Position numbers and translations under genes: made by a program
Virus record (IMG/VR): IMGVR_UViG_3300020473_000010
Span: 1-64,000 of that record
Direction: 5' to 3' (one strand)
DNA: 64,000 bases
Notes under the pieces: generated by a model
Told to the model about the DNA's origin: nothing
Seen by the model: the letters and a program-made list of their open reading frames with translations, nothing else
Databases searched by the model: none
Part shown: piece by piece, positions 33,202-60,493 of the stretch
How positions within the stretch are numbered: the stretch's first letter is position 1
Layout: each line of letters opens with the position of its first letter

Positions 33202-33213
33202 CAAGAATTCTCT

Positions 33214-34979: not shown

Positions 34980-34981
34980 AG

Positions 34982-37153: not shown

Positions 37154-37154
37154 A

Positions 37155-37946
37155 TCATAATCCTATAAAAATAACCATACCAGAAGAATTATAATCTCTT
37201 CCTAATGATTTCCAAACACGTTGCGCATCTTCAGAGGTGCCACCGCTGAAAGGGCTAGAACCACCACCCATTGTGCATGCATGGGCGCCAACAAAGACTC
37301 CGCCATATCTTTTTGAATATTCCACAGCTTGATCAATAAAAGCCTTATAAATCTCTTTGCCGTAACCTTTCCCTCTATTTTCAGGATTTGAAATCCAAGC
37401 ATTATTTACTTCATAGAATCTAGGCCTGAACTTTGCTGGTCTTTCTTTCATGCTATATCCATGGGGAGAATCCGGATCTTCAATCATATCTTTTGTTGTA
37501 TTGTTTGCTTCAAATTTTTCCTTGGCTGCAATATATTCTGGTGTTTGTTTTAAAATATCGACATCTGATTGACATTCTTTAAACCTTAGTTGTTCTCCAC
37601 CTTCTGCATATCCAATTCCGGATAACTCTACTCGAAAGTAATCTGGGCCTCCTTTGTGTATAAAATTTGATCTTTCCAAAAGATGTATTTTTGATTCTAT
37701 TTTTATACCATTTGCAAAATCATGATTTAATCCCCATAAGAAATTCTTCATTTCTTTATGTGAAACATTTCCTATAGCATCTTGGACGGCATCTACGACG
37801 GTATTGAGTTTTGGGTGTCTTAATTTTCTGGGGTTAACTTTCTCATTACCCCATTGGTTTGTATCGATATAATGACCAACCTTATCAAGGAATCCCATCT
37901 CTTTTTCTAACAAAATTTGTCTTATGTATTGACGTAAATACTTCAT
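37155..37946 (-). CDS. Leader-bearing GNAT acetyltransferase-like protein
   Basis: MKYLRQYIRQILLE; acetyl-CoA motif A PENRGKGYGKEIY; SEDAQRVW. Confidence 0.65.
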   Translation of the reverse strand: MKYLRQYIRQILLEKEMGFLDKVGHYIDTNQWGNEKVNPRKLRHPKLNTVVDAVQDAIGNVSHKEMKNFLWGLNHDFANGIKIESKIHLLERSNFIHKGGPDYFRVELSGIGYAEGGEQLRFKECQSDVDILKQTPEYIAAKEKFEANNTTKDMIEDPDSPHGYSMKERPAKFRPRFYEVNNAWISNPENRGKGYGKEIYKAFIDQAVEYSKRYGGVFVGAHACTMGGGSSPFSGGTSEDAQRVWKSLGRDYNSSGMVIFIGL

Positions 37947-38060
37947 TTTTTCACCAGGATTTGCAAGACCAATAACGGGCTTTATCTTTGGGCCCAGGAT
38001 TATCACAATTGTGACGAGCTCTGAAAGATTTTCTTGCTTTAGGGTTTGATTTTCTTATTT

Positions 38061-38459
38061 TCATATTTGGGTCACCAAATTGAACTTTTTTGCTTTGTTT
38101 TGTCCTTTGCATGATCCGGATTTATATTTACCATCGCCAGAAACATATACTTTTGATTTTTTGTTTTTGTTCTCAGGGTTAGACATTTTTTTATTTAATG
38201 TTACTTTTCTACCATCATAGCATGCTTCAAGGATTCGGCTTATTAATATCCGTAATTTAGATTCATTTAATTCGTCAACCTTCTCTTCTGATTCGTCTAA
38301 TTCTGATATTTTCTCACAATTGTTTACTCTTTTTCCTGTTTTTGAAGAGATTTTAGTTTTCTTGCCCGACTTGGCTCCTGGGGAATAACCATCCCAACAT
38401 TTTTTTTCGTTGAGAGATTCGCGAATGATTTGTTTGAGTTGTCTTTTTGTAATTTTCAT
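38061..38459 (-). CDS. Leader-bearing basic protein
   Basis: MKITKRQLKQIIRE; KCWDGY...NNCEK; internal LRILISRILE. Confidence 0.65.
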   Translation of the reverse strand: MKITKRQLKQIIRESLNEKKCWDGYSPGAKSGKKTKISSKTGKRVNNCEKISELDESEEKVDELNESKLRILISRILEACYDGRKVTLNKKMSNPENKNKKSKVYVSGDGKYKSGSCKGQNKAKKFNLVTQI

Positions 38460-38682
38460 TGGATACACCTGAGGGTTTTTTTATTATTAATAATTATTTC
38501 TTCTTTTTTAAGTTCCCTATTTATTATTTTATATTTTCTATTTCCGATTTGTTCTTTTTGTTTCAGTATTAACAAATCGTTTCTTTGTTTTTTTATTAAG
38601 GTGCTTTTATTATATAAATTTTCGCAATGTTGATGATTAAAATTAACACAAGATGAAAAACAAACAATGATAAATAACGTTA

Positions 38683-39186
38683 TTAACATTTCTTTTTAAG
38701 GTTTTTGATTCCATCTGGATGCCAAATGCACCCTGATGCAACATCCCAACTATAATACCAAAAATGTCTTTGGCGTTTTGAAGGAAGGTATGGGCATATT
38801 TCTATTCCTGCATATTTTTTCGAAACCAAGTTCCAATCGATTACTAACTCAAATTTTCCTTTTCTTCCATATTCAGTTTCAAATTGGTCAAATTCTGAAT
38901 CATTAGTAATAAATAATATTTTCTCTTCATTGAGAAATACTTCGTAAACAGAATCATATCCTCTGTGACTATAGCCTCCAAGTTCAATATTACAAAATTC
39001 TTGCCATACATTTCCGCAGTCATACCATAAGCCTGTGGGTTTTTTAGGGCCTATTTGATCAGATGCCGATGGTTGTGATTGTGGCTGCAACAATTTTAAG
39101 ATTTCATCGTCTCGAGAATGATGAAGTCTTTGAACTTGGATTCCTTCCAACAAAACGGTTCTTATATATTGTCTTAATTGTTTCAT
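38683..39186 (-). CDS. Leader-bearing conserved phage protein
   Basis: MKQLRQYIRTVLLE; KPTGLWY...YAGIEI...WDVASGCIW. Confidence 0.65.
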   Translation of the reverse strand: MKQLRQYIRTVLLEGIQVQRLHHSRDDEILKLLQPQSQPSASDQIGPKKPTGLWYDCGNVWQEFCNIELGGYSHRGYDSVYEVFLNEEKILFITNDSEFDQFETEYGRKGKFELVIDWNLVSKKYAGIEICPYLPSKRQRHFWYYSWDVASGCIWHPDGIKNLKKKC

Positions 39187-39198
39187 AAACTTTTCTCT

Positions 39199-40317
39199 TT
39201 AATATCTTTCTTTTTTGAAGATGTTAAGAAGAAATTTAACATCATTTTTATTTTGGGGATTAATAACTTTTTGAGAATTGTCTCCCATATAACTGTTTTC
39301 TAAAAGATATATTGGTTTTTTAATAGATCCATCTTTTAAAGCTTTTTCGAAAAAGTTTTTTGCTCTATAGACATCAGCAATATACCATGCTGAAATTTTC
39401 CAGTTATCTAATATTACCTCTTCTAAACCTGTAGCTTCTCGATCTTTAATATCTTTTTCGTTTAGAGCAACTGCATTAGCTCTTATCTTAAAATAATTTT
39501 CTATTTCTTTTGTAGATTTTCCTTTTCTTTCCATTTTGCGTTTTATCCATTTTTTCTTTTTTTCTGGAAATTTTGTACTAGATACTGCTGTCATAGCCGC
39601 TCTTTTAGGAAGGCCTGAAGATTTATAATATTCTCTTGCTTTATCTGAGGCCATTCTTTGGGTTTGACTAGCTAAATCTGTAAAAGCTGCAAATATTGGC
39701 CAACCCTCAATTAAAAATCCCCACCCTTTAGACATCATAGATTGGCTTCCCACAAGAGGGTTTCCAGACGGGGTATACGTAGCTGAAACGGAAATCGCGT
39801 TTTTTTGTGGGGTTTCTTGAGCTTCAATCCATTGTGATTTTAAAGGTTTGGTGATTTTAATCCCGAAAGATCCCATTGCTCGGGCGGCGGATTTATAGGT
39901 AACATCATGAGTATATGTCATTTTATTAGATTTGAAGAAATCTATATCAGCTTTTTCTTGCCATAATCTCATCATCGCTCGTTCAATATCAATTTCTTTT
40001 AAAGTTTGTCCGTGTTTTACTCTTCTTTCAGATGGGTGTCGATTATCGTAATGTTCCGGATTTTCATCGGTATAAGGAGGCTTTTTTTCATCTTTTGTTA
40101 CTTGATAAATCACTTCTATATCGCGCCAATCTTGTTCATGTTCTTGGGTTTCTTCGTTCCAGTAATATCCATAATGAGGTTCTATAGATGTTTCAGTAGG
40201 AATATTTTCTTGGACAGAAACCCAGTCACCCCAAAGGTCTTCAGCTGCTGATAGAAATTCAGGATCTGTAGTTTCTTTTAAGAGTAAAAACCTTATATAT
40301 TCTCTCAAAACTTTCAT
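39199..40317 (-). CDS. Leader-bearing protein, EEVILDNW family
   Basis: MKVLREYIRFLLLKE; family motifs. Confidence 0.65.
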   Translation of the reverse strand: MKVLREYIRFLLLKETTDPEFLSAAEDLWGDWVSVQENIPTETSIEPHYGYYWNEETQEHEQDWRDIEVIYQVTKDEKKPPYTDENPEHYDNRHPSERRVKHGQTLKEIDIERAMMRLWQEKADIDFFKSNKMTYTHDVTYKSAARAMGSFGIKITKPLKSQWIEAQETPQKNAISVSATYTPSGNPLVGSQSMMSKGWGFLIEGWPIFAAFTDLASQTQRMASDKAREYYKSSGLPKRAAMTAVSSTKFPEKKKKWIKRKMERKGKSTKEIENYFKIRANAVALNEKDIKDREATGLEEVILDNWKISAWYIADVYRAKNFFEKALKDGSIKKPIYLLENSYMGDNSQKVINPQNKNDVKFLLNIFKKERY

Positions 40318-41502
40318 TTAGTTTCTTCCTTGAAAAAAATCTCTAACAGCCCAATGAGGTCCTTCATAATCTTCAGCAAAAGATTCTGGATCTAACCCTA
40401 ATTCACTTGCATATTCTAAAAATTCATTATGATTATCCATCATTGCATAGAAGTCTGAATCTGCATAATCTGTATTATAAGAAACATTTAGATCTGCTGC
40501 AACGTTTTCGCTTGGCGGGTAATCATCATATAAGTCGGCTTCACTATTTATTTTATGGTCATACCATTCTTCTCTTAAAGTTTGAATAATATCTTCATAT
40601 GGTTCACCATAATCTTCTTCTATTTCTTCTTCGTTATCTGCCATATATCCTTCTAGATCATTTAAGATCTCATCTGGATCTAGAGTTTCCCATTCTCCAT
40701 TATCCATTACTTTTCCAAATTCATGCCATTCTTGGTAGTTGTTAATAAACCAATCCATAAATAATTGTTTCATTGCGTTTTTTATTCCATCAGATGCTCT
40801 TTGTCCCTGAAGTAAACAATCATCATCTTCAAATTCTGTTATTTGAATATCTTCGTCATCTAAATATCTTTTATCAATATCATTACGAGCTGTTGCGTAT
40901 TTATTCCAAACATGGCGGGCTGATGAGGAAACAGAAGATCTATCTGAAGTTAATCCCTCTGGAGCAATAGACATTATCATGTCATATAAGGTTGGTCCTA
41001 AGCCATCATCTGCGGCGGATCTTATAACTTCCCAAGCACCGTTGCAGTTCCCGTATCTTCCCGGGGTTCTTATTCGCATCACAGCTTTTGTTGTTTCAGT
41101 AATTGCAGAAGAGATAAGATCTGATGATGCTTCAAATAATTCGGATTCTAAATCTGTATCAGCATCTATATCTTTTTCTATAAAACGTGCGTCGGTTTCT
41201 AATATTTGTTTTGCAAGTTGAGCATCATAAAGAACAAAATCTATTTCAGTTGATTCCGGAATTTCCATTCCTTCTCCATAAAACGTTGTCCAAATAGCAA
41301 ATTTTGAGGAAACAGAGGATGGATTTATCATTGCTTCAAATAAAATTTTGTGAATATATATTCGTAAATTTTCTATTTGAAGATCTTTAGAATTTAATGG
41401 TACTTCTTTTTCTCCAACTTCATCAAAAGTCATATCAAACGGATTTTCTTTAATAGCCACTTTCAGTCTCCAGTTCCCATGGTCCCCAATGTTCAGTTTC
41501 AT
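40318..41502 (-). CDS. GNAT-like protein with internal leader and acidic tail
   Basis: IENLRIYIHKILFE; DGLGPTLY...DRSSVSSSARHVW; paralogous to 32611. Confidence 0.55.
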   Translation of the reverse strand: MKLNIGDHGNWRLKVAIKENPFDMTFDEVGEKEVPLNSKDLQIENLRIYIHKILFEAMINPSSVSSKFAIWTTFYGEGMEIPESTEIDFVLYDAQLAKQILETDARFIEKDIDADTDLESELFEASSDLISSAITETTKAVMRIRTPGRYGNCNGAWEVIRSAADDGLGPTLYDMIMSIAPEGLTSDRSSVSSSARHVWNKYATARNDIDKRYLDDEDIQITEFEDDDCLLQGQRASDGIKNAMKQLFMDWFINNYQEWHEFGKVMDNGEWETLDPDEILNDLEGYMADNEEEIEEDYGEPYEDIIQTLREEWYDHKINSEADLYDDYPPSENVAADLNVSYNTDYADSDFYAMMDNHNEFLEYASELGLDPESFAEDYEGPHWAVRDFFQGRN

Positions 41503-41821
41503 TTATCCAATGTAACAGGTCATCATAACTATATTCATAAACCTGTGGTTGTCTTTCTTTCCAGCCATCTTTGCTCTCAACAAATGTTTGCTCAATTTTA
41601 CCTAAAGTATAATATAAAAATTTAGGGTATACGATATTTCTCCCATTGGAATAATCGTGTACCATATCTGAAGCTTTGTGAATTAAGAAAGCATGCCCAA
41701 AAGGTGTGCTTTCTAATTCACCTTGCCCAATAACTTCAGCATGGACAAGAATCCATTCACCAGATCGGCCATGGTCCATCATATATTTTCCAGCTATTTC
41801 ATAGCAATCTCCAAGCATCAA
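41450..41821 (-). CDS. Small Cys/His protein, possible transglutaminase/papain-like fold
   Basis: GDCYEIA...LVHA...GHAF. Confidence 0.5.
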   Translation of the reverse strand: MMLGDCYEIAGKYMMDHGRSGEWILVHAEVIGQGELESTPFGHAFLIHKASDMVHDYSNGRNIVYPKFLYYTLGKIEQTFVESKDGWKERQPQVYEYSYDDLLHWINETEHWGPWELETESGY

Positions 41822-42363
41822 ATATCTTCCTCTGTTAATACCTGCCTAATATATCTCCGGAGATTTTCCATAGCCGGTTCTCTTGTTTTCAACCACCCTG
41901 CTTTTCCTGAACCTCTTGGAGGCGATGATAGAAATTTATATGTTTCTTCATCTGTTATCCACAAAAGTTCCGGATGGTCTTTTGTGTTAAGGTGATTGTT
42001 AAAATTATCAGAAGCTACTGACATTTCCCCATCCCCTCTTTGATCTTTTGCCAACATTATAAGATCGTCTAATCTTCCCCAATTTTTATCTTTTGTCATA
42101 TCATATTTGCTAGCAAATCTTTTATACAATTCAGGACTATGTTTATCTTTTCCAAATATTTGAATCAATCTGTTTTTAATGTCTTCTATTTCTATTTCCG
42201 GAATAGCTGAAGCTTGTTCTATTTCAGTATTTTTCTTTCGTTTCTCTGCTTGGGTCTGGTGCTTTTTATCAATTTCAGCATCAAAGTCTTCTATTTCTTT
42301 TTCAGCAGCTTTTTTTGCAGCATCTAAATCTTCAAAAATAATGTGTTTAAGGTATTTTCTCAT
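41818..42363 (-). CDS. Hypothetical protein with N- and C-terminal leader-like helices
   Basis: MRKYLKHIIFE ... ENLRRYIRQVLTEE. Confidence 0.6.
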   Translation of the reverse strand: MRKYLKHIIFEDLDAAKKAAEKEIEDFDAEIDKKHQTQAEKRKKNTEIEQASAIPEIEIEDIKNRLIQIFGKDKHSPELYKRFASKYDMTKDKNWGRLDDLIMLAKDQRGDGEMSVASDNFNNHLNTKDHPELLWITDEETYKFLSSPPRGSGKAGWLKTREPAMENLRRYIRQVLTEEDI

Positions 42364-43107
42364 TTATTCTTCATCCCTATATTCTAAAGGCCAGTCTTGA
42401 TCAGGCCAGCGAGTCATAAGATAGAATTGGTATACTTCTCGTATCCGATTCATAAAAGAGACCATCTCTTCTTGAGTGTATCCGAAATGGAGACCTGTAG
42501 CATAAATATTGTTTAATTCTCTATCTATTAAATCTGCAGCGGGAATTCCTTCTCTTTTTGACTGTAAAACCCAATCAGCTACATGGGCTGGAGTTTCAGA
42601 TTGGTTAATATAGTATTTTTCAGCATTCTCTAGTGATATCCAAATATCTTCTTCGGACTTAATGGTTTCCCTAACACTCATAAGGTGTTCAGTTGGTTGC
42701 CCAGAATGTTCTAATTCATGGCGAATACTTCCTTCATATTTTATTTCAAAACGCTTAAGCTCTTCTTCTGTATAGTCGGACGGCATTTTAAGATATATAA
42801 TTAAATCGGAATTTTTCCTTTGTTCGTCTGTAGCATCTAAATCAAATTCATAAGCAGCGTGAGTATTAAAAGTATTTGAATCTTCTACAGAAACTATAAT
42901 ATCTCTCAGCCAAATAAGTTTTTTCGGTTTTTCGAAATCAATTCGAAATTTAATTGACTTTCTTTGTACAAATGCCTGCTTAAGACCGTTATCAAGTAAA
43001 GCGCTGGTGATTTCCTTTGCAATTTTTTTTGCGGCTCTTTCTAAATTTCTTCCAGAAAGAGATTTTTCTAATAATAAAGTTTTTATATATTTTCTAAGGA
43101 GTTCCAT
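42364..43107 (-). CDS. Leader-bearing HExxH protein
   Basis: MELLRKYIKTLLLE; IRHELEHSGQ. Confidence 0.65.
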   Translation of the reverse strand: MELLRKYIKTLLLEKSLSGRNLERAAKKIAKEITSALLDNGLKQAFVQRKSIKFRIDFEKPKKLIWLRDIIVSVEDSNTFNTHAAYEFDLDATDEQRKNSDLIIYLKMPSDYTEEELKRFEIKYEGSIRHELEHSGQPTEHLMSVRETIKSEEDIWISLENAEKYYINQSETPAHVADWVLQSKREGIPAADLIDRELNNIYATGLHFGYTQEEMVSFMNRIREVYQFYLMTRWPDQDWPLEYRDEE

Positions 43108-43663
43108 GTCTTTCTCTCAATATCTCGTGTAGTTCTTTCATATGTTCTTTTTTGATATAACCCGGGATATAAACGTTTTTCAAAGCAGAAGAATATTTTA
43201 TAATCTGTTTAGGTGAAGGAGAATGAGAAAGATTATGGATTAAATCCGAAATTTTTACTATTCCAGATAAAGGGTTATTTAAAGTAGCTTGAAGATATTC
43301 CGGATAAGGAATTGATTTTTCGTGAGTTAAAAGCATTAATGCATCAAGTAGTTGGCTTAAAATCTCTTCATCATGTATTGAAGATTTTATCATATTAAAG
43401 GCTTCTTGTTTAGATACATTTCCAACTTTTTCTGCGTCTTCCAAGGAATCATGAAGCAGAGCTAACATTTGGGCCGGCTTATTATTTGGATAATATTTTT
43501 TCGTAATATTATAAACCCCTAATGGATGAGAAAAACCTGTTGTTCCATCTCTTCTCGTTTGCCCTAAATGTACTAATTCTGCTGTTTGTCTAACATCTTC
43601 AAGGTCTTGACGAGAAAGATATTCTTTTAATAAGGTTTTTATATATTTTCGCAAAAATGTCAT
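43094..43663 (-). CDS. Leader-bearing RelA/SpoT-type HD hydrolase (Mesh1/SAH-like)
   Basis: H.GQTRRDG...HP, ALLHDSLED, LLTH, VKISDLIHNL. Confidence 0.85.
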   Translation of the reverse strand: MTFLRKYIKTLLKEYLSRQDLEDVRQTAELVHLGQTRRDGTTGFSHPLGVYNITKKYYPNNKPAQMLALLHDSLEDAEKVGNVSKQEAFNMIKSSIHDEEILSQLLDALMLLTHEKSIPYPEYLQATLNNPLSGIVKISDLIHNLSHSPSPKQIIKYSSALKNVYIPGYIKKEHMKELHEILRERHGTP

Positions 43664-43678
43664 GATTATAACCCAGTT

Positions 43679-44416
43679 TTATAATAAAAATGTTTCCATA
43701 TTGGATCTTATAGATTCTATATTTTCTTGAAAATCTTCAAAAGACGACGAATTATCAACAAAAAAGAACGAATTTCCAAACAAAAGTTTATATGGTTCAA
43801 GGTTCTTATCCACAGAATCCCAGCTACGAGCCGCAGCGTCTGAATGGATTCTTCTTTTTCCTTTTTCACCTCTTTGCCAGTTTCTTTCAATGGAAGTTGT
43901 TTTTGGTACAGAAATATAAATCATTCCCGTATCATATCCCATATGCTTATAAACCGTATTTAACTTTGATATTTCTTTATAATTTCCCCCTGTGCCATCA
44001 ATAATAAAATCAATTCCTTGTGAACTTAATTCACTAGCTTTTTCTTTTGCTAATTTTCTAGCTCTAGCAAATAATTTCATATTTTCAGACATTGTTGGCC
44101 TTAGAGCTTCTCTTTCTGATTGAAGTTCAGTAACATCTAAACCCTCTGCTTTTCCTGCTTTTATAGCACTCATAATGTCGAAATACTTTTGGGTAAATGT
44201 ATGGATATCTAAAGAAATTCCTGCTTCTTCTAAAAACGGTTCATACCAATCGTCGGGATTTACAATTTCAAATTGGTTGATTAACCCGAGTTGTTTTAAA
44301 ACCGTGGATTTTCCTGCACCAGGTGCGCCGGCCATGAAAATAACTTTTCTTCCAGGAGAAATATCTCCAGCCATTTCCAAAATTAAATTTCTTATATATT
44401 TTCTGAGAGTAATCAT
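43679..44416 (-). CDS. Leader-bearing zeta-toxin-like P-loop kinase
   Basis: FMAGAPGAGKST, VNPDD, IIDGTG, SIERN..R. Confidence 0.8.
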   Translation of the reverse strand: MITLRKYIRNLILEMAGDISPGRKVIFMAGAPGAGKSTVLKQLGLINQFEIVNPDDWYEPFLEEAGISLDIHTFTQKYFDIMSAIKAGKAEGLDVTELQSEREALRPTMSENMKLFARARKLAKEKASELSSQGIDFIIDGTGGNYKEISKLNTVYKHMGYDTGMIYISVPKTTSIERNWQRGEKGKRRIHSDAAARSWDSVDKNLEPYKLLFGNSFFFVDNSSSFEDFQENIESIRSNMETFLL

Positions 44417-45264
44417 AGTTTTTGGAATTTCCTTTTAAGTTTTTTAATATCTTTGTCTGTGTATGTATATTCCTCGAAGTCTTCATCAACTACTTTGATG
44501 CCTTTTGCATTGAGCGCTAATACTTCTTGATGTATATCTTCAAACGGATTATATGGCCAAATTAAAGTATTCCATCGCCAATTATCGACAATCACTTCTT
44601 CTATATAAAATTGATTATATTTCCCTAAAACGGAAAGGACATCTTGTTGATCAAATAAAACCCCTTCTCCTGAAGTGTTACTCAATCCGGGTCGTTTTGG
44701 CAAACCAGATCCTTGATGACGTTGTAAATCCTTTGCTGATGCAGACCCTCGAGATTCCGAAAAAGCATCTGTAAGACCTGCCCAGGTGATTCTTCCTGAG
44801 AGGATAATACCTTTACCTTTTATGTTATAACTACTTTCTAGTATTCCATAACAAGACATTTCATCTTTATGGACTTTGTTTGGCTTGTACTTTTCAATAA
44901 AAGCAGAAACAGAAAGATCTATTTCGCCTCTTGATACATCTCCACCCATTAAATTATAATAATTTAAACTATGTACGCACTTTACTGTTTTCCAATAATC
45001 ATGGTCTGCATGTTTATTCCAGAAACCTTTCATTTCTCTTTTAAGGTTAATATATTCTGTTGCTTTCTTTTTTCCTAGTTTCTTTGTGAGTTCATCATGG
45101 TGCCAGGTACCGACACTCATGTTATCTCCGGAATCTGGATCTGGATCTTCGGGAACTGTTGTCATTTCTCCTTCTTGTCGATTCCACCTGAATTCACTAA
45201 ATGCATCTTGAAGTTCTGGAGACTCAAGTAAAAGCGCTCGAATATATTTCCGTAAGTATTTCAT
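44413..45264 (-). CDS. Leader-bearing protein, EEVIVDNW family
   Basis: MKYLRKYIRALLLE; family motifs. Confidence 0.65.
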   Translation of the reverse strand: MKYLRKYIRALLLESPELQDAFSEFRWNRQEGEMTTVPEDPDPDSGDNMSVGTWHHDELTKKLGKKKATEYINLKREMKGFWNKHADHDYWKTVKCVHSLNYYNLMGGDVSRGEIDLSVSAFIEKYKPNKVHKDEMSCYGILESSYNIKGKGIILSGRITWAGLTDAFSESRGSASAKDLQRHQGSGLPKRPGLSNTSGEGVLFDQQDVLSVLGKYNQFYIEEVIVDNWRWNTLIWPYNPFEDIHQEVLALNAKGIKVVDEDFEEYTYTDKDIKKLKRKFQKL

Positions 45265-51008: not shown

Positions 51009-51043
51009 AAAAAAATTAAGCCGCTTTCAGCGGCTTTCTTTTT
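51009..51043. terminator. Bidirectional terminator
   Basis: AAGCCGC/GCGGCTT hairpin flanked by A- and T-runs between convergent genes. Confidence 0.75.
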
Positions 51044-51816: not shown

Positions 51817-51835
51817 AAAGGTTCCCCCCTTTATT

Positions 51836-52331: not shown

Positions 52332-55300
52332 TTATCGTCTCGTATATCGATCCACTGCGCCTTTTAGGCCGGCAGATGGTTTGGATCCAGAAGCGTAAAC
52401 TATCCCTTCTTGATCGTCTAACCAAACTATTCCTTCTTCAGTTAGTTCATCGATAATATCAAACCCAGCGGCGCCGAACAAACTGTTGATTTCATCTAAA
52501 GATACTCCGTCTGGCCTAGATGCTAAATCCAAAATATCTGCGTATGGATGTACGTGGTCTTCTGCTAAAATTCTTTTATATTCTTCTCTAATAATTCTTT
52601 TGAGTTGTCTTTTCGTAATTTTCACTTTGTTTTCCTTGTTTGTTAGCTTGTTAGATTCGGTCATTCCCATTGCTTGAGCAGCTCGAGCATTAGCTTTAAC
52701 GTTTATTTGTTCGCGACTATTTACGGCGTCGTATGCTCTTAGTTTACCAAGTTCACCTTTGGTAGAAACACCCGAATCAACATATCGCCCTTCTACTTCA
52801 TCCATTACAACCCAGCCGCCATTCCAGCCTGCATCATCATCCCAACCACCATCAAAATAGTCATCTAAGTCCGGATATAATTTGCGAAGTTGGCGAAGTT
52901 CATCTCCACCAGTTAAATCGTCTAGCAATCGGTTTCTAGCTGCTCTTCGACCGTGGGCTGTTTCGTTAATAATTTGTTTAAGGTGTTGCTTTGAAATTTT
53001 CATATTATTATTGTCTTTCCATATCAACCATCGGATGTAATGCGTCCATATATCTTCTTAGATCATCGATTAATTCAATCAGCCAATCGTCATCTATGTC
53101 AGCATTTGCATCATCATACATTTTTGCTTCTTCCAGTGAAGCTAAAGCAGCTTCAATAAACCCAAGCTTTTTACTATATGAATATTGTTTTCCTCCCATT
53201 GCACTTTCGAAAGATTTGGTATAATCATCAATATTTTCATTTACTGGGCTAGTCGGGAAATTTGACGGATTTCCTTTTAAGCTTTCTCGAATGATTCTTC
53301 TTAATTTATTTTTTGTTAATCTCATTTTTGTTATCTCCTAGAAGTCTCTTTTGCTTCTTGTTTGCCATCTTTCCAATTGAACATATAATATTCGTTATCC
53401 GGATGTTGGGGTTCGACATTATTAAGTCCATCCATATATCCTAATTCCATCATGTCTTCCATTTTTCCTTCATCTCCACCAAGTTCTTCATATGTAGAAG
53501 ACATTGAATAGTTTCTACTGGCCATGCCATGCGCAGATGGGTCAACGCGAGCAAGGATTCCATTATACCAATATCCTCGAGCATGTTCAGGTCTTCCAGA
53601 AACTTCCCAAGCTTCTTCTACGAGTTCAGCTATTTCTTCCATAATTTCCTTAAACCTTGGAGCATCTCCTTGGAGCCTGGATTCTTTAAGAAGTTTTTGC
53701 TTTTCTTCTTTGATAATTCTTTTTAACTGTCGTTTTGTAAGTTTCATCAGTCTCGCCACCCAGGAGCCGCGCGGCTTTGTCTTATTTGGGATTTTGCATA
53801 TCTTCTCATATCTTTTCTGCCAGCTTTTGTAGCTTCTCTATCTAGCTCTTTGTTTCTTCGGTATCTTTCTTTTCGCTTAAGTTCCGTTTGGAATTTATCG
53901 CGGGCATCATCCAGGTAACTAGTCAACCTCTGATCTCTTTGATCATGCACATAATCGCCTCGAGGCCATAATCCAGTAGCATCTAAAGCTTGAAATATAA
54001 TATCAGTCTTTTGATAGTGGTGACCTAATCGATCAGATAGATTATCGATTACTAACTGGTTAAGATTGGCTTTCTGTTCGGGGGATAACTTTCTTGTATT
54101 TATTCTAAGATATTTTAAGAGTTTATTGGTTTCAGTATGCAAGCGAACTCGACCTTCTGAAAGGATGATTTGCTTTCTAATTACTTTTCTTAGTTGGCGT
54201 TCTGTGATTTTCATTATACATTTCCTCCCCAACCATAAGACGCATCTAAAGCATCGAAAACATCGGTTTCTGAGGCTTCATTAATTTCATACATATGCTC
54301 AGCTAATTCCTCTGCTTCATCCTGTGATAATCCTCGAGGAGACATTGCAGCATCCATTGTTGCAAAATCTTTATACCTCATCATGAAAGCTAGTTCATCT
54401 AAATCTAATACTCCAATATCCATTGCTTTGGCAAAACTATACCAGTTTGATTCTTGTGGAGGAAGACGGTTGCCCTTACGTGCATCGATTAAACGCTGAC
54501 CATATGTTGCGACTGGTTTTCTTTGATGAGATCGCCCACCAAAGGTTTCTTTATCCCAATCTTCTTTTAGGAGTTTAGTGAATTCTTCTCGGATAATTCT
54601 CTTCAATTGTCTTTTAGTAATTTTCATTCCATCTTCCTTTTAAAGTGTTACTCTTGATCCCAAGAACGACCTTTTGGTTTCCACGATTTCGAAGGTTTTT
54701 CTTGTGCTCCCATAAGATCTGATTTTAATTTATCAAGGGCTACATGAGCTGCATCAATATATTCAAGTTTGTTATACCAATTACGATCCATTCCTCCTAA
54801 AAGTCCTTCAAGTTCTCTTTTAACACTCCACATGAAATCATCAAGTTCTTGAATTTGGCGAGGCCCAATTTTATAAGAGGTATTTTCGGTGAGAAGTTTC
54901 TCTTTTTCTTCTCTAATAATTCTCTTGAGTTGTCTTTTTGTAAGCTTCATGTTCATTCTCCGGAATAATTTTGATCATACATGTTATCTAACCAACTTTC
55001 AAACCATTCTCTTAAATTTTCAGCAGCCATATCGAATGCTGCATTTGCTTCTTCAGCAGAAATACCGCCAGAGCTTTGATGGTTAATATTTTCATTGACA
55101 AAAGAATCCAATAAAGCCTCTAGAGCAAAAGAAGCGTCTTCACTTTGTCTTCCATGCATTTCCGAAAGAAGTTTTTGCTTTTCTTCTTTGATTATATTCT
55201 TCAATTGTCTTTTGGTAAGCTTCATGTACAACAGCCTTTTTCACAATTGCAACACCCACAGCAGCAGCAACAGTGTTTGTCATTAAATAAATTTGCAAGT

Positions 55301-58201
55301 CGGTGTAATATCTTTTTCATTTTTAATATCCTTTTCTATCTGGCGGAAGTGTCATTTCGGAGAACCAACCCATTTCCCAGGCATCTGCTAAATGTTTGTT
55401 ATGTGGTTCTACCTTTGGGTTTGTGACTATATTCTCTCCTGCTAAAGCTGCAGCGGATCCTTCTTCGTAAGCACTTTGTTCTTCAAAACTTAAATTTAAA
55501 AACTCTTGTTCTCTTTGAAGAGAATCCCATTTTTTATCTGGGGGCTTATGTGGTTGGTATCCATGAGAATCTTCGAAACTTTCTAAACTATCATAAACAT
55601 CCGTTTCACGAGAATCCGGAACAAAATTGCCCCAGCGCTGGAAATCTTTTTTCATTTCCTTTTGAACTAAATATGGAACTTCTTCTAATGTTTCCCGTAT
55701 AATTCTTCTTAGCTGTTTTCTTGTGAATTTCATTTTAATTTCTCTCAGAGGCCTGAATACATGTCCATAGCAGCTTCGAAGGCTTCAGCAACTGAAAGGT
55801 CTCCAATGCCAATTCCATCGATATCTTCTACAACAGCATCAGCTGGCATAGGATGTCCATGGTCATCCTCGAATTGAGAGAGAAAATCGCCAATATTCAT
55901 ATTATTGTGGTAATACTCTCCAAGGTTATAAGAAGTATCAGATTCATTAACAAAAATCTCAAGGTCCTGGCCATTAGAGGTTGGTTGTATCCAAAGGGTT
56001 AACCTCATGTGTCGGCTTTCACTAAGAATACGGTTGTATTCTTCTCTAATAATTCTTTTTAGTTGTCTTTTTGTGATTCTCATTATTTCGCCTTATTGTT
56101 AAATAAAATTTATTATCTGGAAGCTATCCAAGCAATCATAGGTGTGTAAGAAGATTCAGGAAAACGGGGATGCATTGGGAATTTGCCGCGTTTATATTTT
56201 CTTATTCCAGCAGCTATTTCCTTTACAGCCGGTAAGTCTCGGACAAAGAGTGCGCTGTCTTCATGGTTCAAGATGGCTTCCATTGCGTCATTAACCCCAA
56301 CAGAATTTAATTCTTCTGCAGCTACATCGACCAACTCAAGTGAGATGAGACCTTCAGCTAAGGCAGATTCACAAAACCCTGGAATATCATACCAATCTTT
56401 ATGATATATTCCAGCCTCTTCTGCTTGGGCTGCCAAGTCTTCACTGTGAAACGCAGATTCTCTAATAAAGCCTTTCCGCTTGAGCTTATTATACTCTTCT
56501 TTAATAATTCTCTTAAGTTGTCTTTTTGAAATTTTCATTTTGTTTTATCCTAAAAATCTGAACCGGACTCTCTTTGTTCGGCAGCCGCAGCATTCCATTC
56601 ATTTTCTATTGCTTGATAAATCTCGTCACCAAAATACTTGGTGTCTATTCCAGGAAACTGTCGAGCAAAAACCTGTAGTATTTGGTTGAAAAGATCCATT
56701 ATTTCTGGGCTATCTTCCATATATTGAGGGGCTTCCTTGATAAGCTTCTGCTTTTCTTCGCGTATAATTCTTTTCAATTGTCTTTTTGAAATTTTCATTG
56801 TTGGATTTACCTCACGCATGGGAAAATGGTTACTTGTTAAATCATTTGAACGAATTCATCAAAATCATCTGCCGCGAATGAATCTCCTTCCATGTACATG
56901 TTAACATACCAGTCTTTAAGTTCGTCTAGTGGACCGGTAACTTCCACTTCTGGAAAACCGTTTGGTCCCTCTCCATAGACTTGTACTTCAAGATCTGGGT
57001 ACCTGCCTTGAATCGCAGTTGCTGGATCAACTTCTGCTCCCCAATCTACCATAATCCCAGCTTGTGGCCCATATGATTCACGGATTAATCCTCGTCGTTT
57101 TAATCTAGAATATTCTTCTCTAATAATTCTCTTAAGTTGTCTTTTTGTGATTTTCATTTTTGTTTTCCTTAAATAGCTATTTGTGCTTGTTATCGTCGAC
57201 GTTTATACGAATAATCGCTAGCACTGGCTCTACCGCCAATAAAATCATCGTGGTCTTGTGGTCCAACAGAATCAGCAAGGTCCATCCAAGCGGAAGCTGG
57301 TAATCCTATAAAAGATTCTAGCTGTTGAACAGAACCTCCAATCCAGTCATCGCCATAGCCGCCGCCTTCAAAAAACTCTATTCCGCCCAACCCTTGTTCG
57401 GCATCCCCAAGTAAATCTCTGCTGCTATCACCGGTAAGCTGTGCAATATCTCCAAGAGTAATCCACTGAAGCCCTTGAGCAGATTCGCGAAGCAAACCCT
57501 GTTTTTTTAATCTAGAATACTCTTCTCTAATAATTCTCTTAAGTTGTCTTTTTGTAAGTCTCATTTTGTTTTCCTATTGTTGTAACATTGCTTGCAAGTT
57601 TGCAATGATATGTGGGATTTCGCTTTTCGGAAATTCTAGGAGTGTTCTTCCGAGCTCCATATAAACCGTACCGTTGACGAACATAGTCATATGTATCCCG
57701 CCAGGTGTTTCACCCATCCATGCTTGTTCATGCCCTGGATCATCTTCAAAATCAGGGTGGGAATCTTGCCACTCAGTAAGAATCTTTTGCTTCTCTTCTC
57801 TGATAATTCTTTTGAGTTGTCTTTTTGTAATTTTCATCAATAAACCCCTATTAATCGATTGGTAGACCAGCTACGTAATCATCCCATACCTGTGATAATT
57901 CTCCAGTAGACCCTCGAGAATCATATGCTAATCTCCAAAGATAATCTTCAAGCATAGGATCTGGATATTCAACGCCAGCAGCTGCAGCTAATTGGCTTAA
58001 TAATTCCTCTGCTTGATCATCCTTTCTGTTTTGAACCAATTGCTGAAAGTGATCCAAACTTCCCACTTGTGGTGGAACTCCGCTTTTTTTCGCATGAGAA
58101 GCATACGGCTCATCGAAGGTTTCTCTAATCAAGCCTTGTCGCTTCAGCCTAGAGTATTCTTCTCTAATAATTCTTCTTAATTGTCTTTTTGTCAGTCTCA
58201 T
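52332..58201 (-). repeat. Tandem array of 15 genes with MK(I/L)TKRQLKRIIREE leaders and unrelated, mostly acidic cargo
   Basis: ORFs 52332, 53008, 53331, 53747, 54214, 54648, 54953, 55323, 55745, 56113, 56550, 56837, 57190, 57574, 57851; identical 35-nt DNA at 57114-57148 and 57521-57555. Confidence 0.9.
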
Positions 58202-58255: not shown

Positions 58256-58498
58256 TTAAAGATATACCTTAATGTATCCAGTATTAAATATGTCGTTGGA
58301 TTGTATTTTCTCGAAAGAATATCTATCCAAGACAGCAAGAACCAATGTTTTCATTCGATATGATTTTCCTGTGATAATCATAGCCCAACCAGAATATTCT
58401 CTATGATTATAGATAAATCTATCTACTGTGTTTTCTACGTCCGCATGTTTTACTCCGTGAAGATCTAGTGTTGGGTTTTTTCTTTCTTTTTTTCCCAC
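58256..58498 (-). CDS. Smr/MutS2-domain protein
   Basis: LDLHG...IITGKS. Confidence 0.8.
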   Translation of the reverse strand: MGKKERKNPTLDLHGVKHADVENTVDRFIYNHREYSGWAMIITGKSYRMKTLVLAVLDRYSFEKIQSNDIFNTGYIKVYL

Positions 58499-58787
58499 GG
58501 CGTTTCCTTCGAATTGGTTTGAATTTAGATATATCCGGTGTTGCAGAAGTTATAAGCTTTCTCTTATCTGTCGGACTTAATTTCTTAACTACAGATTCTT
58601 CTGAAAGCGCAACACCTCGGCTATCTCCAACTTCGTAAAATCCAATCAACTTTACTGGCCTTCTGACCTTTGTATACTTCGCTCCAGCAGCCGTATGGTT
58701 GTGCTCATAGACGCGTCTCTGGACATCTTTGGTAATGCCTGTATATAAAGTGCCATCTTTACACTCTACTATGTATAGATACCAAAT
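58419..58787 (-). CDS. GIY-YIG nuclease family protein (UPF0213-like), non-ATG start
   Basis: Frame reads IWYLYIVECKDGTLYTGITKDVQRRVYEHN..GAKYT..RRPVKL...E..VKKL; starts ATT, 6 nt after AGGAG. Confidence 0.8.
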   Translation of the reverse strand: MWYLYIVECKDGTLYTGITKDVQRRVYEHNHTAAGAKYTKVRRPVKLIGFYEVGDSRGVALSEESVVKKLSPTDKRKLITSATPDISKFKPIRRKRRGKKRKKKPNTRSSRSKTCGRRKHSR

Positions 58788-58796
58788 ACGGATCTC

Positions 58797-59753
58797 CTAA
58801 AAGTGTATCTGGACCATCCATCCACGATTTTTGCTGGGTTTATAAAAGGATGTAATAAGTTTTCGACCATCTTCAAAAATAAGATTATATTTTTGTCTTT
58901 CGTTTTCACTATAATCTATAAACTTTTGTCCTTCTTCTATTTCGAAAGAAGAGTTTTTAAACAAGTTTGGTGGTGCTTCAAATAAATCCCATTGGTCACC
59001 GGTTGACCAAGTGTCTCCATTTTTAGTAATATGCGGTCTCATTACAACGTGAACATTTGAAAACCGACTTTCTAAATATTTTCCTAGGATTTTTTTATTT
59101 TTGTTAAGCCATTCAATATTTTTACCAGGAGAATATTCACAATATTTTTCTTCAAGTTGTTCCATCCAATGTGTAATATGACTAGGATCACTTGGAATTA
59201 GATGTTTAACTGAAAAATATGGATTGGTTGTTAAAGAACAAAAACAGCCTTTTCCTGGTTTTGTAGCTCCTCTGGATTTTATATGAAGTTCAATAGTAAT
59301 AGTTTCCCCGGGCATCCAATGACCTTTAGGTAAACCGGTGAATGAGGGCGGATATGATATAGGAATTGTAGAGTTATTTTCTATAGTCCAGATGACATCT
59401 GTATTTGCGTATTGGTTTTCTGGATATATTATTTCCTTTGTTGTCCAATAACTTCCTAGCTCAACTTCCGGAGCATATATTGTACGACTTGGCATTTCTT
59501 CAAAATAGTACATTGTAAGAACATTGTCTTCTTTATCTTTAAAAGCCCAGAATTCTTTTGTTTGAACTATTTTATATTTTGTATTTGGTAATGAAGCTAA
59601 AGCCATCCCTTCGTAAAAGTTTCCAATCATATGATTACGACCGGAACCCTGAGTCCGAGGGTTAACTTTGTTTTTACGATGCCATTGGGGGGATTTAAAT
59701 ATTATATCCTGGCCTTGCCATTGGATACGAACTGTTTTTGAAGAATTAGACAT
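58797..59753 (-). CDS. Hypothetical protein
   Basis: 318-aa ORF downstream of a phage promoter. Confidence 0.6.
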   Translation of the reverse strand: MSNSSKTVRIQWQGQDIIFKSPQWHRKNKVNPRTQGSGRNHMIGNFYEGMALASLPNTKYKIVQTKEFWAFKDKEDNVLTMYYFEEMPSRTIYAPEVELGSYWTTKEIIYPENQYANTDVIWTIENNSTIPISYPPSFTGLPKGHWMPGETITIELHIKSRGATKPGKGCFCSLTTNPYFSVKHLIPSDPSHITHWMEQLEEKYCEYSPGKNIEWLNKNKKILGKYLESRFSNVHVVMRPHITKNGDTWSTGDQWDLFEAPPNLFKNSSFEIEEGQKFIDYSENERQKYNLIFEDGRKLITSFYKPSKNRGWMVQIHF

Positions 59754-59826: not shown

Positions 59827-60210
59827 TTATTTCAATATTTTTATAAATTTTTCTGCGATTTGGTTTTCTATAGATTCTGTAAGAGGATTACCTTCTGTTT
59901 TGAGGCGGTGTAATTTATAATCCATATATTCAAAGGCAGATCTTAATCTATCTTCAGCCGTAGTAATTTTGTCTTGAACCCATCCGGGTAAATCATCTCC
60001 ATCCTGTAACCGGTCATGCAAAGATTGAGACCATTTTCCCATTCTGAAAAGTTTTGCTTTTGACATTCTACCTTCATGAGAATCTGATTTTACTTGGCCA
60101 TAGTCAAACATACGGCCATCTTCACTAGTATGCTCATATGGATATGAATCTATAGAGGCAGAACAAGCTTCTCTAATAATTTTTCTTAATTGACTTTTAG
60201 TAACCTTCAT
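59827..60210 (-). CDS. Leader-bearing protein with a conserved large-phage helical domain
   Basis: MKVTKSQLRKIIRE; HEGRM.K..L...LHD...D.DDLP.WVQ.KIT.A.D.L.SA..Y. Confidence 0.65.
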   Translation of the reverse strand: MKVTKSQLRKIIREACSASIDSYPYEHTSEDGRMFDYGQVKSDSHEGRMSKAKLFRMGKWSQSLHDRLQDGDDLPGWVQDKITTAEDRLRSAFEYMDYKLHRLKTEGNPLTESIENQIAEKFIKILK

Positions 60211-60493
60211 TCCAATCTACCCCTTTAGCTTTATCCTGGCCGGATTCATATCCTTCCATATAATCCTTACGATCTGGATATTCTGGTGAAAGGCCGTCGA
60301 CGGCATCTTCATATCCAAAACGAACCATCTCTTCATCCCAAGTTCCCTTCCAGTCATCTTTAAAGAATCCTCTTTTGACAACTCCACCCGGGCCATAAGG
60401 GTTTTCTCTATATGCTCCTCGGCTTCTGCCGGTATCGACATCTGATATAATTTCAGAAATAATTTTTTTAAGATTTCTTCTACTTATTTTCAT
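60197..60493 (-). CDS. Leader-bearing hypothetical protein
   Basis: MKISRRNLKKIISE; GY.DA..G...YM.GY motif also in 53331. Confidence 0.6.
   Translation of the reverse strand: MKISRRNLKKIISEIISDVDTGRSRGAYRENPYGPGGVVKRGFFKDDWKGTWDEEMVRFGYEDAVDGLSPEYPDRKDYMEGYESGQDKAKGVDWNEGY

What the first reader, a model, noticed from the sequence alone, without database searches (positions are those of the whole stretch)
52332..58201. Fifteen-gene leader array with near-identical 5' DNA and a fused cassette
Seen: each gene starts with nearly the same 45-60 nt. An identical 35-mer occurs at 57114-57148 and 57521-57555, with a shared upstream AGGAAAACAAA RBS, and cargoes are unrelated. ORF 52332-53027 contains, in frame, the same AAGGAAAACAAA-GTG plus a second full leader at 52625, so two cassettes appear fused or have two starts. 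Two subtypes follow the leader: KQKLL(K/T/S)E and Y(S/N)(R/K)LKRxGLIRE. Inference: recombination at the leader DNA captures and swaps new cargo.
Basis: partly seen in the sequence, partly recalled or inferred. Interest (0 to 1): 0.7.

Follow-up and report, generated by a model that had tools for sequence, protein, structure and literature searches.

The report
Shared capsid-targeting-like leader on swapped phage genes
An uncultured 289-kb marine T4-like phage puts the same 14-residue N-terminal tag, ending in the cut site of its head protease, on dozens of unrelated small proteins, so these are probably proteins packed into the capsid, as with phage T4's internal proteins but far more numerous.

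Summary
Fifteen ORFs on the minus strand (52332-58201), plus two at 59827-60493, start with MKITKRQLKRIIRE. One ORF carries a second in-frame copy, and the cargoes are unrelated.

The window is the start of a 288,697-bp marine virus record. That genome encodes a T4-type prohead protease (Peptidase_S77), portal and Gp23 capsid protein.

About 28 genes genome-wide carry this leader. A second 14-residue leader class (MKxLRxYIRxxLxE) heads about 14 more genes at 31.7-45.3 kb.

In 92% of 145 unique leader proteins an [LI]-x-E, the T4 gp21 cleavage motif, ends at residue 14. Both "subtypes" end in a second [LI]-x-E, and conservation stops there.

My best reading (about 0.55) is a capsid-targeting propeptide that loads varied, mostly acidic cargo into the prohead and is then cut off.

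Leader DNA identity is 81%, against 74% expected from the peptide and codon bias. The peptide, not the DNA, is the main constraint.

Cargo turnover is nonetheless real. One closely related scaffold has a different cassette order and a hybrid gene whose breakpoint lies inside the leader. Only 3 of 28 cargoes recur in a relative with 72% capsid-protein identity.

No packaging or cleavage has been shown. The leader occurs in at least 6,803 protein clusters and has no Pfam or PHROG match.

The parts
52332..53003 (-). Fused two-leader ORF of 223 aa from ATG 53003. The first, divergent leader is MKISKQHLKQIINE (codons at 52962-53003). A second full leader, VKITKRQLKRIIRE, starts at GTG 52625.
   Evidence: The 12 nt before 52625 match the junction upstream of 57564, with AAG where that junction has the stop TAG, and GTG in place of ATG. 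The same 223-aa ORF is called in independent assemblies. The cargo of the second half has a leaderless 73-aa homolog in G001.
53008..53325 (-). Leader gene, 105 aa, MRLTKNKLRRIIRE
53331..53747 (-). Leader gene, 138 aa, KQKLLKE subtype. The C-terminus shares a motif with the gene at 60197-60493.
53747..54214 (-). Leader gene, 155 aa, divergent leader MKITERQLRKVIRK. It lacks E14 but has ILSE ending at residue 20. The cargo is basic.
54214..54627 (-). Leader gene, 137 aa. Its cargo homolog in G001 lies inside a two-leader fusion ORF.
54648..54950 (-). Leader gene, 100 aa, KEKLLTE subtype
54953..55225 (-). Leader gene, 90 aa, KQKLLSE subtype
55323..55733 (-). Leader gene, 136 aa. The cargo has a weak RMF-like match.
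   Evidence: PF04957, E 1e-4, below the cut-off
55745..56083 (-). Leader gene, 112 aa, YNRILSE extension
56113..56538 (-). Leader gene, 141 aa, YNKLKRKGFIRE subtype. Its homolog in L064 sits in a different position in the array.
56550..56798 (-). Leader gene, 82 aa, KQKLIKE subtype. In L064 its 5' region and leader are joined to a different cargo.
56837..57157 (-). Leader gene, 106 aa, YSRLKRRGLIRE subtype. Holds one copy of the 35-mer (57114-57148).
   Evidence: AF2 model: helix 5-21, flexible linker 22-31, folded domain 32-106.
57190..57564 (-). Leader gene, 124 aa, YSRLKKQGLLRE subtype. Holds the second copy of the 35-mer (57521-57555).
57574..57837 (-). Leader gene, 87 aa, KQKILTE subtype. 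Its stop TAG lies inside the ribosome-binding site of the next gene.
57851..58201 (-). Leader gene, 116 aa, YSRLKRQGLIRE subtype
58256..59753 (-). Interruption of the array: an 80-aa Smr-like ORF (58256-58498) and a 318-aa ORF of unknown function (58797-59753). Neither has a leader.
59827..60210 (-). Leader gene, 127 aa, MKVTKSQLRKIIRE. Its cargo domain recurs inside a protein of about 950 aa in G001.
60197..60493 (-). Leader gene, 98 aa, MKISRRNLKKIISE
38061..38459 (-). Solitary class-1 leader gene, 132 aa, basic cargo, located inside the class-2 array
31683..45264 (-). Second array: about 14 genes with a class-2 leader, MK-x-LR-x-YIR-x-[ILV]L-x-E. The register is the same 14 residues, with L-x-E at 12-14. 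Cargoes are 78-372 aa and include an HD domain and a Zeta-toxin/AAA_33-type kinase.
51018..51036 (.). Bidirectional terminator-like hairpin. It probably ends the minus-strand transcription unit that runs through the array and the genes at 51042-52312.
   Evidence: pattern match only

Best explanation
The leader is a protein-level module. It is a basic amphipathic N-terminal helix of 14 residues, often extended to 22 or 27, that ends in the L/I-x-E motif cut by T4-type prohead proteases.

By analogy with the capsid targeting sequence (CTS) of T4 internal proteins, it would tether each cargo to the scaffolding core of the prohead. The phage's gp21-like protease would then cut it off, leaving the small, mostly acidic cargo inside the head to enter the host with the DNA.

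The cargoes are a fast-turning set of such proteins. The shared leader DNA, together with the ribosome-binding site, also gives short patches of homology at which cassettes are occasionally exchanged or fused in frame.

Shown here: the architecture, the motif register, the protease and other head genes, and the turnover between relatives. Inferred only: packaging into the capsid, cleavage, and injection.
For: 1. Genome context. The genome has a Peptidase_S77 protease (E 2e-26) that aligns with T4 gp21 structure 5JBL and keeps His and Ser at two motifs that I take, from memory, to be the catalytic ones. It also has a Gp23 capsid protein (E 8e-64) and a portal.

2. Protease specificity. The capsid protein's L57-R58-E59|A60 aligns with T4 gp23 L-T-E65|A66, which I recall, again from memory, as the T4 maturation cut; L-R-E is kept in all five related phages. 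This argues for T4-like L/I-x-E specificity, the motif given in PMC9026906.

3. Motif register. In 145 unique leader proteins, [LI]xE ends at residue 14 in 92%. A second one ends at residue 18, 21, 22 or 27 in 62%, against 20% expected from cargo background.

4. Conservation boundary. Among 131 metagenome proteins of one subtype, residues 1-27 are almost invariant and conservation stops right after E27.

5. Exceptions. Two of the three leaders that lack E14 have an [LI]xE within six residues (ILSE-20, LKE-15). The third (89801) has one only if LIE-19 is counted; one search lists its last motif as SVSE-27.

6. A second leader. An unrelated class-2 leader shares the 14-residue register and ends in L-x-E.

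7. Structure. AF2 gives helix 5-21, a low-confidence linker holding LIRE27|S, then a separate folded domain.

8. Domain boundary. A leaderless homolog of one cargo in G001 begins about five residues after the predicted cut.

9. Other head proteins. The N-termini of this phage's head proteins have the same design: protease MKKTMKLLTE, capsid protein MSFTLDKLTE, the 576-aa scaffold-like protein MGSNIYQEAIAE, and a 135-aa protein near the protease gene that begins with a leader-like MPKKVTRSLLKEIVKE. Head-module proteins are enriched in [LI]xE. T4 head proteins look the same: IPII and IPIII MKTYQEFIAE, gp22 MLKEQLIAE, gp21 MNEPQLLIE, gp24 MAKINELLRE.

10. Precedent. T4 internal proteins are described as diverse proteins that share only a CTS (PMC3012670). 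Multiple cut sites within propeptides are known in giant phages (PMC5694885, PMC9026906).

11. Co-occurrence. All four relatives with leader arrays have the S77 protease. In G001 four leader genes directly follow the capsid gene.

12. Peptide, not DNA. Synonymous variation and internal copies without start codons show that selection acts on the peptide.
Against: - There is no proteomic, structural or expression evidence. The phage is uncultured.
- The complex prediction for protease plus leader gave no answer.
- The leader has no sequence similarity to the T4 CTS beyond the MK start and the I-x-E end.
- T4 internal proteins are basic by my recollection. Here 24 of 28 cargoes are acidic, with median pI 4.5.
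- [LI]xE is a short motif that fits any amphipathic helix. The leader proteins are related, so the counts are not independent.
- About 40 or more packaged proteins would be many for a T4-type head.
- Leader genes sit next to head genes in only one of five genomes.
- The T4 late-promoter motif is not enriched, so expression timing is unknown.
- Internal leaders would leave a 14-residue tail on the upstream product, and this is unexplained.
Confidence: 0.55

Rival explanations
1. The leader is a functional part of the mature proteins and is never cleaved. It would be a basic amphipathic helix that docks many different small acidic proteins onto one common partner, such as DNA or RNA, a membrane, a host hub protein or a phage hub protein, during infection.
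For: The leader carries a net charge of about +4.8 over 14 residues and is predicted helical. Strict conservation of T4, Q7, L8, I11 and I12 suggests a specific partner. Internal copies are tolerated. No cleavage has been shown.
Against: This does not explain why conservation ends exactly at a Glu preceded by L/I-x in three different length classes, or in a second unrelated leader class. It also does not explain why the head proteins share this N-terminal design.
Confidence: 0.2
2. The leader is conserved mainly as DNA. It would be a recombination site that captures and swaps cargoes, comparable to integron cassettes or to the promoter-stem-loop (PeSL) cassettes of T4-type phages.
For: There is a hybrid gene with its breakpoint inside the leader, and a different cassette order, in L064. 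Codon identity is in excess: 0.645 against 0.483. An identical 35-mer exists. Cargo turnover is high against G001. T4-type recombination is said to need under 50 bp of homology (PMC2839356).
Against: 74 of the 81 percentage points of identity follow from the peptide and codon bias. Positions L8, K9 and E15 are more codon-diverse than expected. There is no adjacency effect. The peptide is kept in distant phages with other codons and compositions. No promoter or stem-loop signal stands above chance, and intergenic spacers of 10-30 nt leave no room for attC-like sites. The strain is collinear across many samples.
Confidence: 0.1
3. This is an ordinary family of tandem paralogs. The N-terminal helix is under purifying selection and the C-terminal parts have simply diverged beyond recognition, with no targeting role and no cargo exchange.
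For: The genes are arranged in tandem, the leader shows position-specific codon choices consistent with common descent (CTC/CTT at L8, AGA at R10), and the proteins are small and of unknown function.
Against: Cargoes differ in length and in predicted fold class. One cargo exists without a leader and another sits inside a large protein in G001. The L064 hybrid combines a 96%-identical leader region with a cargo from another locus. Leader codons 4-20 of 57157 and 57564 differ at one synonymous site while their cargoes are unrelated.
Confidence: 0.1
4. The conserved 5' end acts as an mRNA element: a shared translation-initiation region or an operator for a translational repressor.
For: The ribosome-binding site with an A-rich start region is shared. 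AGA and ACA codons are in excess.
Against: Synonymous variation is frequent. Internal leaders lack a ribosome-binding site or a start codon; CGA, GCT, CAC, CGG, GTA, CGT and TCT occur at position 1. Conservation extends 66-81 nt into the coding region and follows codon phase.
Confidence: 0.05

Closest known systems
Capsid targeting sequence (CTS) of phage T4 internal proteins IPI, IPII, IPIII and Alt, processed by prohead protease gp21
   Same: A short N-terminal propeptide is shared by otherwise unrelated small proteins. It ends in L/I-x-E. The genome encodes a gp21-type protease, a portal and a gp23-type capsid protein. The cargo set is diverse and turns over quickly between relatives. The genes are clustered. 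(PMC3012670, PMC9026906.)
   Different: - The leader sequence is unrelated: 14-27 residues and strongly basic, against 10 residues and near neutral in T4.
- There are two leader classes.
- About 40 genes per genome carry a leader, against 3-4 in T4.
- Cargoes are mostly acidic.
- In-frame multi-leader fusions are frequent.
- Nothing has been shown experimentally.
Ejection and inner-body proteins of giant phages (phiKZ, 201phi2-1, SPN3US), with propeptides removed by a gp21-like protease
   Same: Many head-internal proteins, some in paralog families with identical N-termini. Cleavage follows Glu at a three-residue motif. Propeptides hold several cut sites. (PMC5694885, PMC9026906.)
   Different: Those motifs are S/A-x-E and the propeptides are often longer than 100 residues. 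Those phages are a different lineage with their own RNA polymerases. Here the head genes are T4-type by sequence.
PeSL-mediated modular shuffling in the hyperplastic regions of T4-type genomes (PMC2839356)
   Same: Short conserved repeats flank orphan genes. Insertion, deletion and replacement of cassettes occur between close relatives, presumably by homologous recombination at the repeats.
   Different: PeSLs are intergenic promoter plus stem-loop units. Here the repeat is the ribosome-binding site plus the first 45-80 coding nucleotides, there is no promoter or stem-loop signal, and the repeat is maintained as a peptide.
Polymorphic effector families with a conserved N-terminal delivery domain and variable C-terminal cargo (my own knowledge, e.g. 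CDI and Rhs toxins, MIX-effectors)
   Same: The logic is the same: a constant delivery handle with swappable cargo.
   Different: The machinery, scale and organisms differ. There is no sequence relation, and this was not tested here.

Membership tests
T4-type CTS / internal-protein system | The genome encodes a gp21-type prohead serine protease | tested here: met
   PF03420, E 2e-26. It aligns with 5JBL and keeps His (GELDHP) and Ser (SSRG) at two motifs that I take, from memory, to be the catalytic ones. The protease is also present in four relatives.
T4-type CTS / internal-protein system | A short N-terminal peptide shared by otherwise unrelated proteins | tested here: met
   About 28 genes carry it. 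Cargoes are unrelated by blastp.
T4-type CTS / internal-protein system | The propeptide ends in the L/I-x-E cleavage motif | tested here: met
   92% of 145 unique leader proteins have it ending at residue 14, with further motifs ending at 18, 21, 22 or 27. The capsid-protein residues L-R-E|A align with T4 gp23 L-T-E65|A66, which I recall from memory as the T4 maturation cut.
T4-type CTS / internal-protein system | The leader is homologous in sequence to the T4 CTS (MKTYQEFIAE) | tested here: not met
   Comparison with the T4 IPI, IPII and IPIII N-termini shows only the MK start and the I-x-E end in common.
T4-type CTS / internal-protein system | The proteins are found inside the capsid, with the leader removed, and are ejected with the DNA | not testable with these tools
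   The phage is uncultured. The complex prediction gave no answer.
T4-type CTS / internal-protein system | An acidic scaffolding core to which the leader binds | tested here: inconclusive
   A 576-aa protein with long acidic blocks lies between the protease and capsid genes and is enriched in [LI]xE (20 against 11.9 expected). It has no family match.
PeSL cassettes of T4-type hyperplastic regions | An intergenic sigma-70-like promoter plus stem-loop flanking each orphan gene | tested here: not met
   Promoter-like sites: 40 against 42.8 in shuffles. No minus-strand terminators lie between cassettes, and spacers are 10-30 nt.
PeSL cassettes of T4-type hyperplastic regions | Cassette gain, loss or replacement between close relatives, with breakpoints in the repeat | tested here: met
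   L064 against the window. This is a single short metagenomic scaffold, seen in two samples.
Integron-like gene cassette array | An integrase and attC recombination sites | tested here: not met
   No integrase was found among the flanking genes scanned. The intergenic spacers are too short for attC sites.

The most novel reading that the evidence does not exclude
A clade of marine jumbo T4-like phages uses two short 14-residue 'address tags', each ending in the protease cut site, to load more than 40 different proteins into the capsid. That is about a tenth of their genes, and includes enzymes and multi-cargo polyproteins. The tag DNA doubles as the crossover point that lets cassettes move between phages. 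This would be a leader-based exchange system for injected effectors, spread over thousands of protein clusters.
Probability: 0.3. Interest if true: 0.8.

Novelty: new variant of a known kind. Interest (0 to 1): 0.6.

Why it matters
If the leader is a capsid-targeting propeptide, one short motif would mark thousands of unannotated marine phage proteins as virion-delivered. Proteins that enter the host with the DNA are the likeliest first-minute counter-defence or takeover factors.

It would also extend the T4 internal-protein idea from three proteins in one model phage to a large, fast-evolving repertoire in abundant uncultured ocean phages. The recurring in-frame fusions would be explained as polyproteins. 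And it would give a testable packaging tag for these phages.

The leader has no Pfam or PHROG match, yet it occurs in at least 6,803 clusters at 50% identity.

Tried and rejected
- Megablast of 12 kb against cultured phages found no match. tblastn of the 28-aa leader against the same set also found none, though the low-complexity filter may mask it.
- Pfam and PHROGs on 20 class-1 proteins gave nothing above the cut-offs.
- A literature search for the motif found nothing relevant.
- The T4 late promoter TATAAATA is not enriched: 13-16 copies against 24-36 expected. The sigma-70 and terminator scan was uninformative, apart from a hairpin at 51018-51036.
- Complex prediction with the protease and leader residues 1-45 scored 0.01. 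The tool's verdict was 'no answer', so this is not evidence either way.
- Foldseek of the 57157 model against the PDB found only generic alpha/beta matches, best E 0.026. The protein atlas returned only unnamed clusters.
- I laid contigs of four marine runs on the array. They are identical and collinear and break at the leader repeats. The listed 'joints' have short sides or a different depth, so they are cross-matches from other leaders or organisms. Contigs cannot show rare variants.
- I looked for synteny through the neighbouring 158-aa gene. It led to unrelated smaller phages where the gene sits among structural genes, with no leader arrays. The flanking 552-aa protein is absent from four relatives.
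- Cargo-based searches in IMG/VR and JGI contigs found only the same strain.
- I rejected a stop-codon reassignment artefact as the cause of multi-leader proteins. The junctions read E-G-K, E-S-K or E-N-K from ribosome-binding-site codons, with no recoded stop, and the window's own fusion has none.

Full report
**What is there.** The window is the first 64 kb of a single-contig virus record of 288,697 bp (36% G+C, CheckV completeness 96%). Both ends of the record share the 3' part of a tmRNA gene.

Between 52332 and 58201 the minus strand carries 15 tightly packed ORFs. Their 5' ends form a repeat family. A profile built from the leader finds 16 copies in that stretch, one of them internal at 52625. 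It finds two more at 60210 and 60493, beyond a 1.6-kb gap that holds an Smr-like ORF and a 318-aa ORF. It finds one at 38459, and ten more elsewhere in the genome at 88.5-89.8, 105.1 and 108.7-109.4 kb. All are on the minus strand, about 28 in total.

Cargoes beyond residue 28 show no blastp similarity, except one short motif shared by two genes. None has a Pfam or PHROG family above threshold.

**How much of the DNA identity is more than peptide constraint.** Over the first 45 nt the 13 canonical leaders are 81.4% identical on average, with a maximum of 93%. Keeping each peptide and redrawing codons from the genome's usage gives 74.0 +/- 1.3%.

At positions where two leaders encode the same residue, the codon is identical in 64.5% of pairs, against 48.3 +/- 2.3% expected. 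Some positions (L8, K9, E15) are more codon-diverse than expected. Others (R10 always AGA, CTC/CTT at L8) point to common descent.

Neighbouring genes are no more alike at synonymous sites than genes in different clusters. The leader is therefore held mainly as a peptide, with a modest DNA-level excess. Locally, codons 4-20 of the 57157 and 57564 genes differ at only one synonymous site although the cargoes are unrelated. That pattern needs recombination or a very recent duplication of that tract.

**What the genome is.** It encodes a T4-type prohead protease: Peptidase_S77, E 2e-26. The protease aligns with the T4 gp21 structure 5JBL and keeps His and Ser at two motifs that I take, from memory, to be the catalytic ones. 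It also encodes a Gp23-family major capsid protein (E 8e-64) and a portal, in a T4-like order.

The nearest cultured capsid proteins, from a Flavobacterium phage and a Microcystis phage, are only 43-47% identical. The sequence is found in marine metagenomes, including TARA samples.

**Why I read the leader as a capsid-targeting propeptide.** T4 gp21 cuts after Glu in L/I-x-E. The T4 internal proteins share a 10-residue N-terminal capsid targeting sequence that is sufficient for packaging and is then removed (PMC9026906, PMC3012670). I confirmed from the T4 record that IPII and IPIII both begin MKTYQEFIAE. I also confirmed that gp22, gp21 and gp24 begin with short peptides ending in I-A-E, L-I-E and L-R-E.

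Here the evidence is as follows.

- In 145 unique leader proteins from this genome, a relative and 27 IMG/VR stretches, [LI]xE ends exactly at residue 14 in 92%. A second such motif ends at residue 18, 21, 22 or 27 in 62%, against 20% expected from the cargo background.
- In 131 metagenome proteins of the latter subtype, residues 1-27 are nearly invariant and conservation stops immediately after E27.
- Two of the three leaders that lack E14 have an [LI]xE within six residues. The third (89801) has one only if LIE-19 is counted; one search lists its last motif as SVSE-27.
- An AF2 model shows a helix at 5-21, a low-confidence linker containing LIRE27|S, and a separate folded domain.
- A leaderless homolog of one cargo in a related phage starts about five residues after the predicted cut.
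- The capsid protein's L-R-E59|A60 aligns with T4 gp23 L-T-E65|A66, which I recall from memory as the T4 maturation cut, and is conserved in five related phages. The protease specificity has therefore probably been kept.
- This phage's own head proteins start with peptides of the same design. A 135-aa protein near the protease gene begins with a leader-like MPKKVTRSLLKEIVKE, and this is conserved in the relative G001.
- A 576-aa protein between the protease and capsid genes has long acidic blocks and many [LI]xE. It is a plausible partner for a leader with net charge +4.8. This last point is inference.

**A second leader class.** While checking other clusters I found that about 14 genes at 31.7-45.3 kb start with a different peptide, MK-x-LR-x-YIR-x-[ILV]L-x-E. 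It has the same 14-residue register and ends in L-x-E. The relative G001 has at least nine such genes.

These cargoes are larger, 78-372 aa. They include an HD domain and a Zeta-toxin/AAA_33-type P-loop kinase. Two unrelated leaders sharing register and end motif is hard to explain except by a common processing or recognition step.

**The fused cassette.** ORF 52332-53003 (223 aa from ATG 53003) has a divergent first leader and a full second one at 52625. The 12 nt before 52625 match the junction upstream of the 57564 gene. That junction has the stop TAG of the preceding gene where the fused ORF has AAG, and the start is GTG instead of ATG. The fusion therefore looks like a lost stop codon. 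Independent assemblies call the same ORF.

Such fusions are common:

- About 15 of 150 unique leader hits are internal. Several have non-start codons at position 1.
- The genome has another case outside the window, a 477-aa ORF at 89454-90887 that reads into a leader gene.
- G001 has a two-leader ORF whose internal leader has no start codon.
- All 150 best hits in a 1.84-billion-protein library contain 2-4 leader copies. That list is biased towards multi-copy proteins because scores add up.

Under the protease model these are polyproteins, and fusion costs nothing. Whether GTG 52625 also starts translation cannot be decided here.

**Is cargo swapped at the leader?** Within the strain the answer is no, as far as the data reach. 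At least 17 contigs that encode the identical proteins, from several assemblies, are collinear wherever shown. Contigs from four runs match the window without differences. These are contigs, however, and they hide rare variants.

Between relatives the answer is yes.

- G001 has 72% capsid-protein identity and 24 leader genes. It shares only 3 of 28 cargoes, each in a different architecture.
- TARA scaffold L064 was seen in two samples and is 95.8% identical over the 57157 cassette. It places the 56538 homolog upstream of the 57157 homolog and carries three cargoes unknown in this genome.
- L064 also has a hybrid gene. It follows the 5' region and leader of the 56798 gene up to about codon 11, then continues with the cargo type of the 89441 gene, at 86% identity. 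The switch lies in leader codons 10-14, where the two parental leaders share only 8 nt. This argues against a k-mer assembly chimera, but it is a single short metagenomic scaffold.

It is not the main reason the leader is conserved.

**Spread.** The exact core KRQLKRIIRE occurs in 27 IMG/VR stretches, with 116 leader ORFs. A word-based search found 778 proteins. A profile of the first 30 residues finds 6,803 cluster representatives at E <= 0.001. None has a name or a family. All four large relatives tested carry the S77 protease and this capsid protein type.

**Weak points.** Nothing shows packaging or cleavage. The complex prediction gave no answer. The leader is not homologous to the T4 CTS. 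Twenty-four of 28 cargoes are acidic, unlike the T4 internal proteins as I recall them. The motif is short, and the sequences are related, so the counts are not independent. Expression timing is unknown. Adjacency to head genes is seen in only one of five genomes.

**Verdict.** The most likely function is a T4-CTS-like targeting and cleavage leader on a large, fast-turning set of capsid-delivered proteins (confidence about 0.55). This is a new variant of a known kind of system, on an unusually large scale and so far unannotated.

Noticed in passing
window 31683-45264 (minus strand): A second array of about 14 genes has a different 14-residue leader, MK-x-LR-x-YIR-x-[ILV]L-x-E. Its cargoes include an HD domain (43094-43663) and a Zeta-toxin/AAA_33-type kinase (43679-44416). 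The relative G001 also has this leader class, at 249-263 kb.
   Followed up: partly
window 3-355 (minus strand) and the last ~50 bases of the 288,697-bp record: The phage encodes a tmRNA (tag ANNNYFYDSERLAA). Its 3' part is repeated at the other end of the contig, which suggests a terminal overlap or repeat.
   Followed up: no
window 55323-55733; also 53331-53747 and 60197-60493: One cargo has a weak match to ribosome modulation factor (PF04957, E 1e-4, below the cut-off). Two other cargoes share a short motif with each other (blastp E 7e-6), which by eye resembles the G-Y-x-D-G...W-x-x-G motif of that factor. The atlas lists a viral cluster of similar proteins in which 41% carry the RMF family.
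   Followed up: partly
G000 89454-90887 (outside the window; locus L060): A 477-aa ORF whose N-terminus, by eye, resembles a HAD-type phosphatase motif (FDFDDTL) reads in frame into a leader gene. This is a second fused cassette in the same genome.
   Followed up: partly
window 58256-58498 and 58797-59753: An 80-aa Smr-like ORF (PF01713, E 1e-3, below the cut-off) and a 318-aa ORF of unknown function interrupt the leader array.
   Followed up: no
window 51836-52312: The 158-aa protein just downstream of the array has homologs (42-55% identity) in unrelated smaller phage contigs. There it sits among structural genes, once as a tandem pair, so it is probably a virion protein.
   Followed up: partly
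window 48757-51629: This stretch holds a CCA-adding (tRNA nucleotidyltransferase) gene at 48757-49575, a class-I methyltransferase at 50055-50990 and a JmjC-domain protein at 51042-51629 (E 9e-15).
   Followed up: no
G002 (IMG/VR relative) 176278-180147: This relative carries two tandem capsid-protein paralogs, each 63-64% identical to the window phage's capsid protein.
   Followed up: no
protein P0003 (metagenome homolog of the 57157 gene): The segment holding the second putative cut site is duplicated in tandem (RQGLIRES twice).
   Followed up: no
G001 240527-243400: The cargo domain of the window gene 59827-60210 recurs at 70% identity as an internal domain of a protein of about 950 aa in the relative G001.
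   Followed up: no
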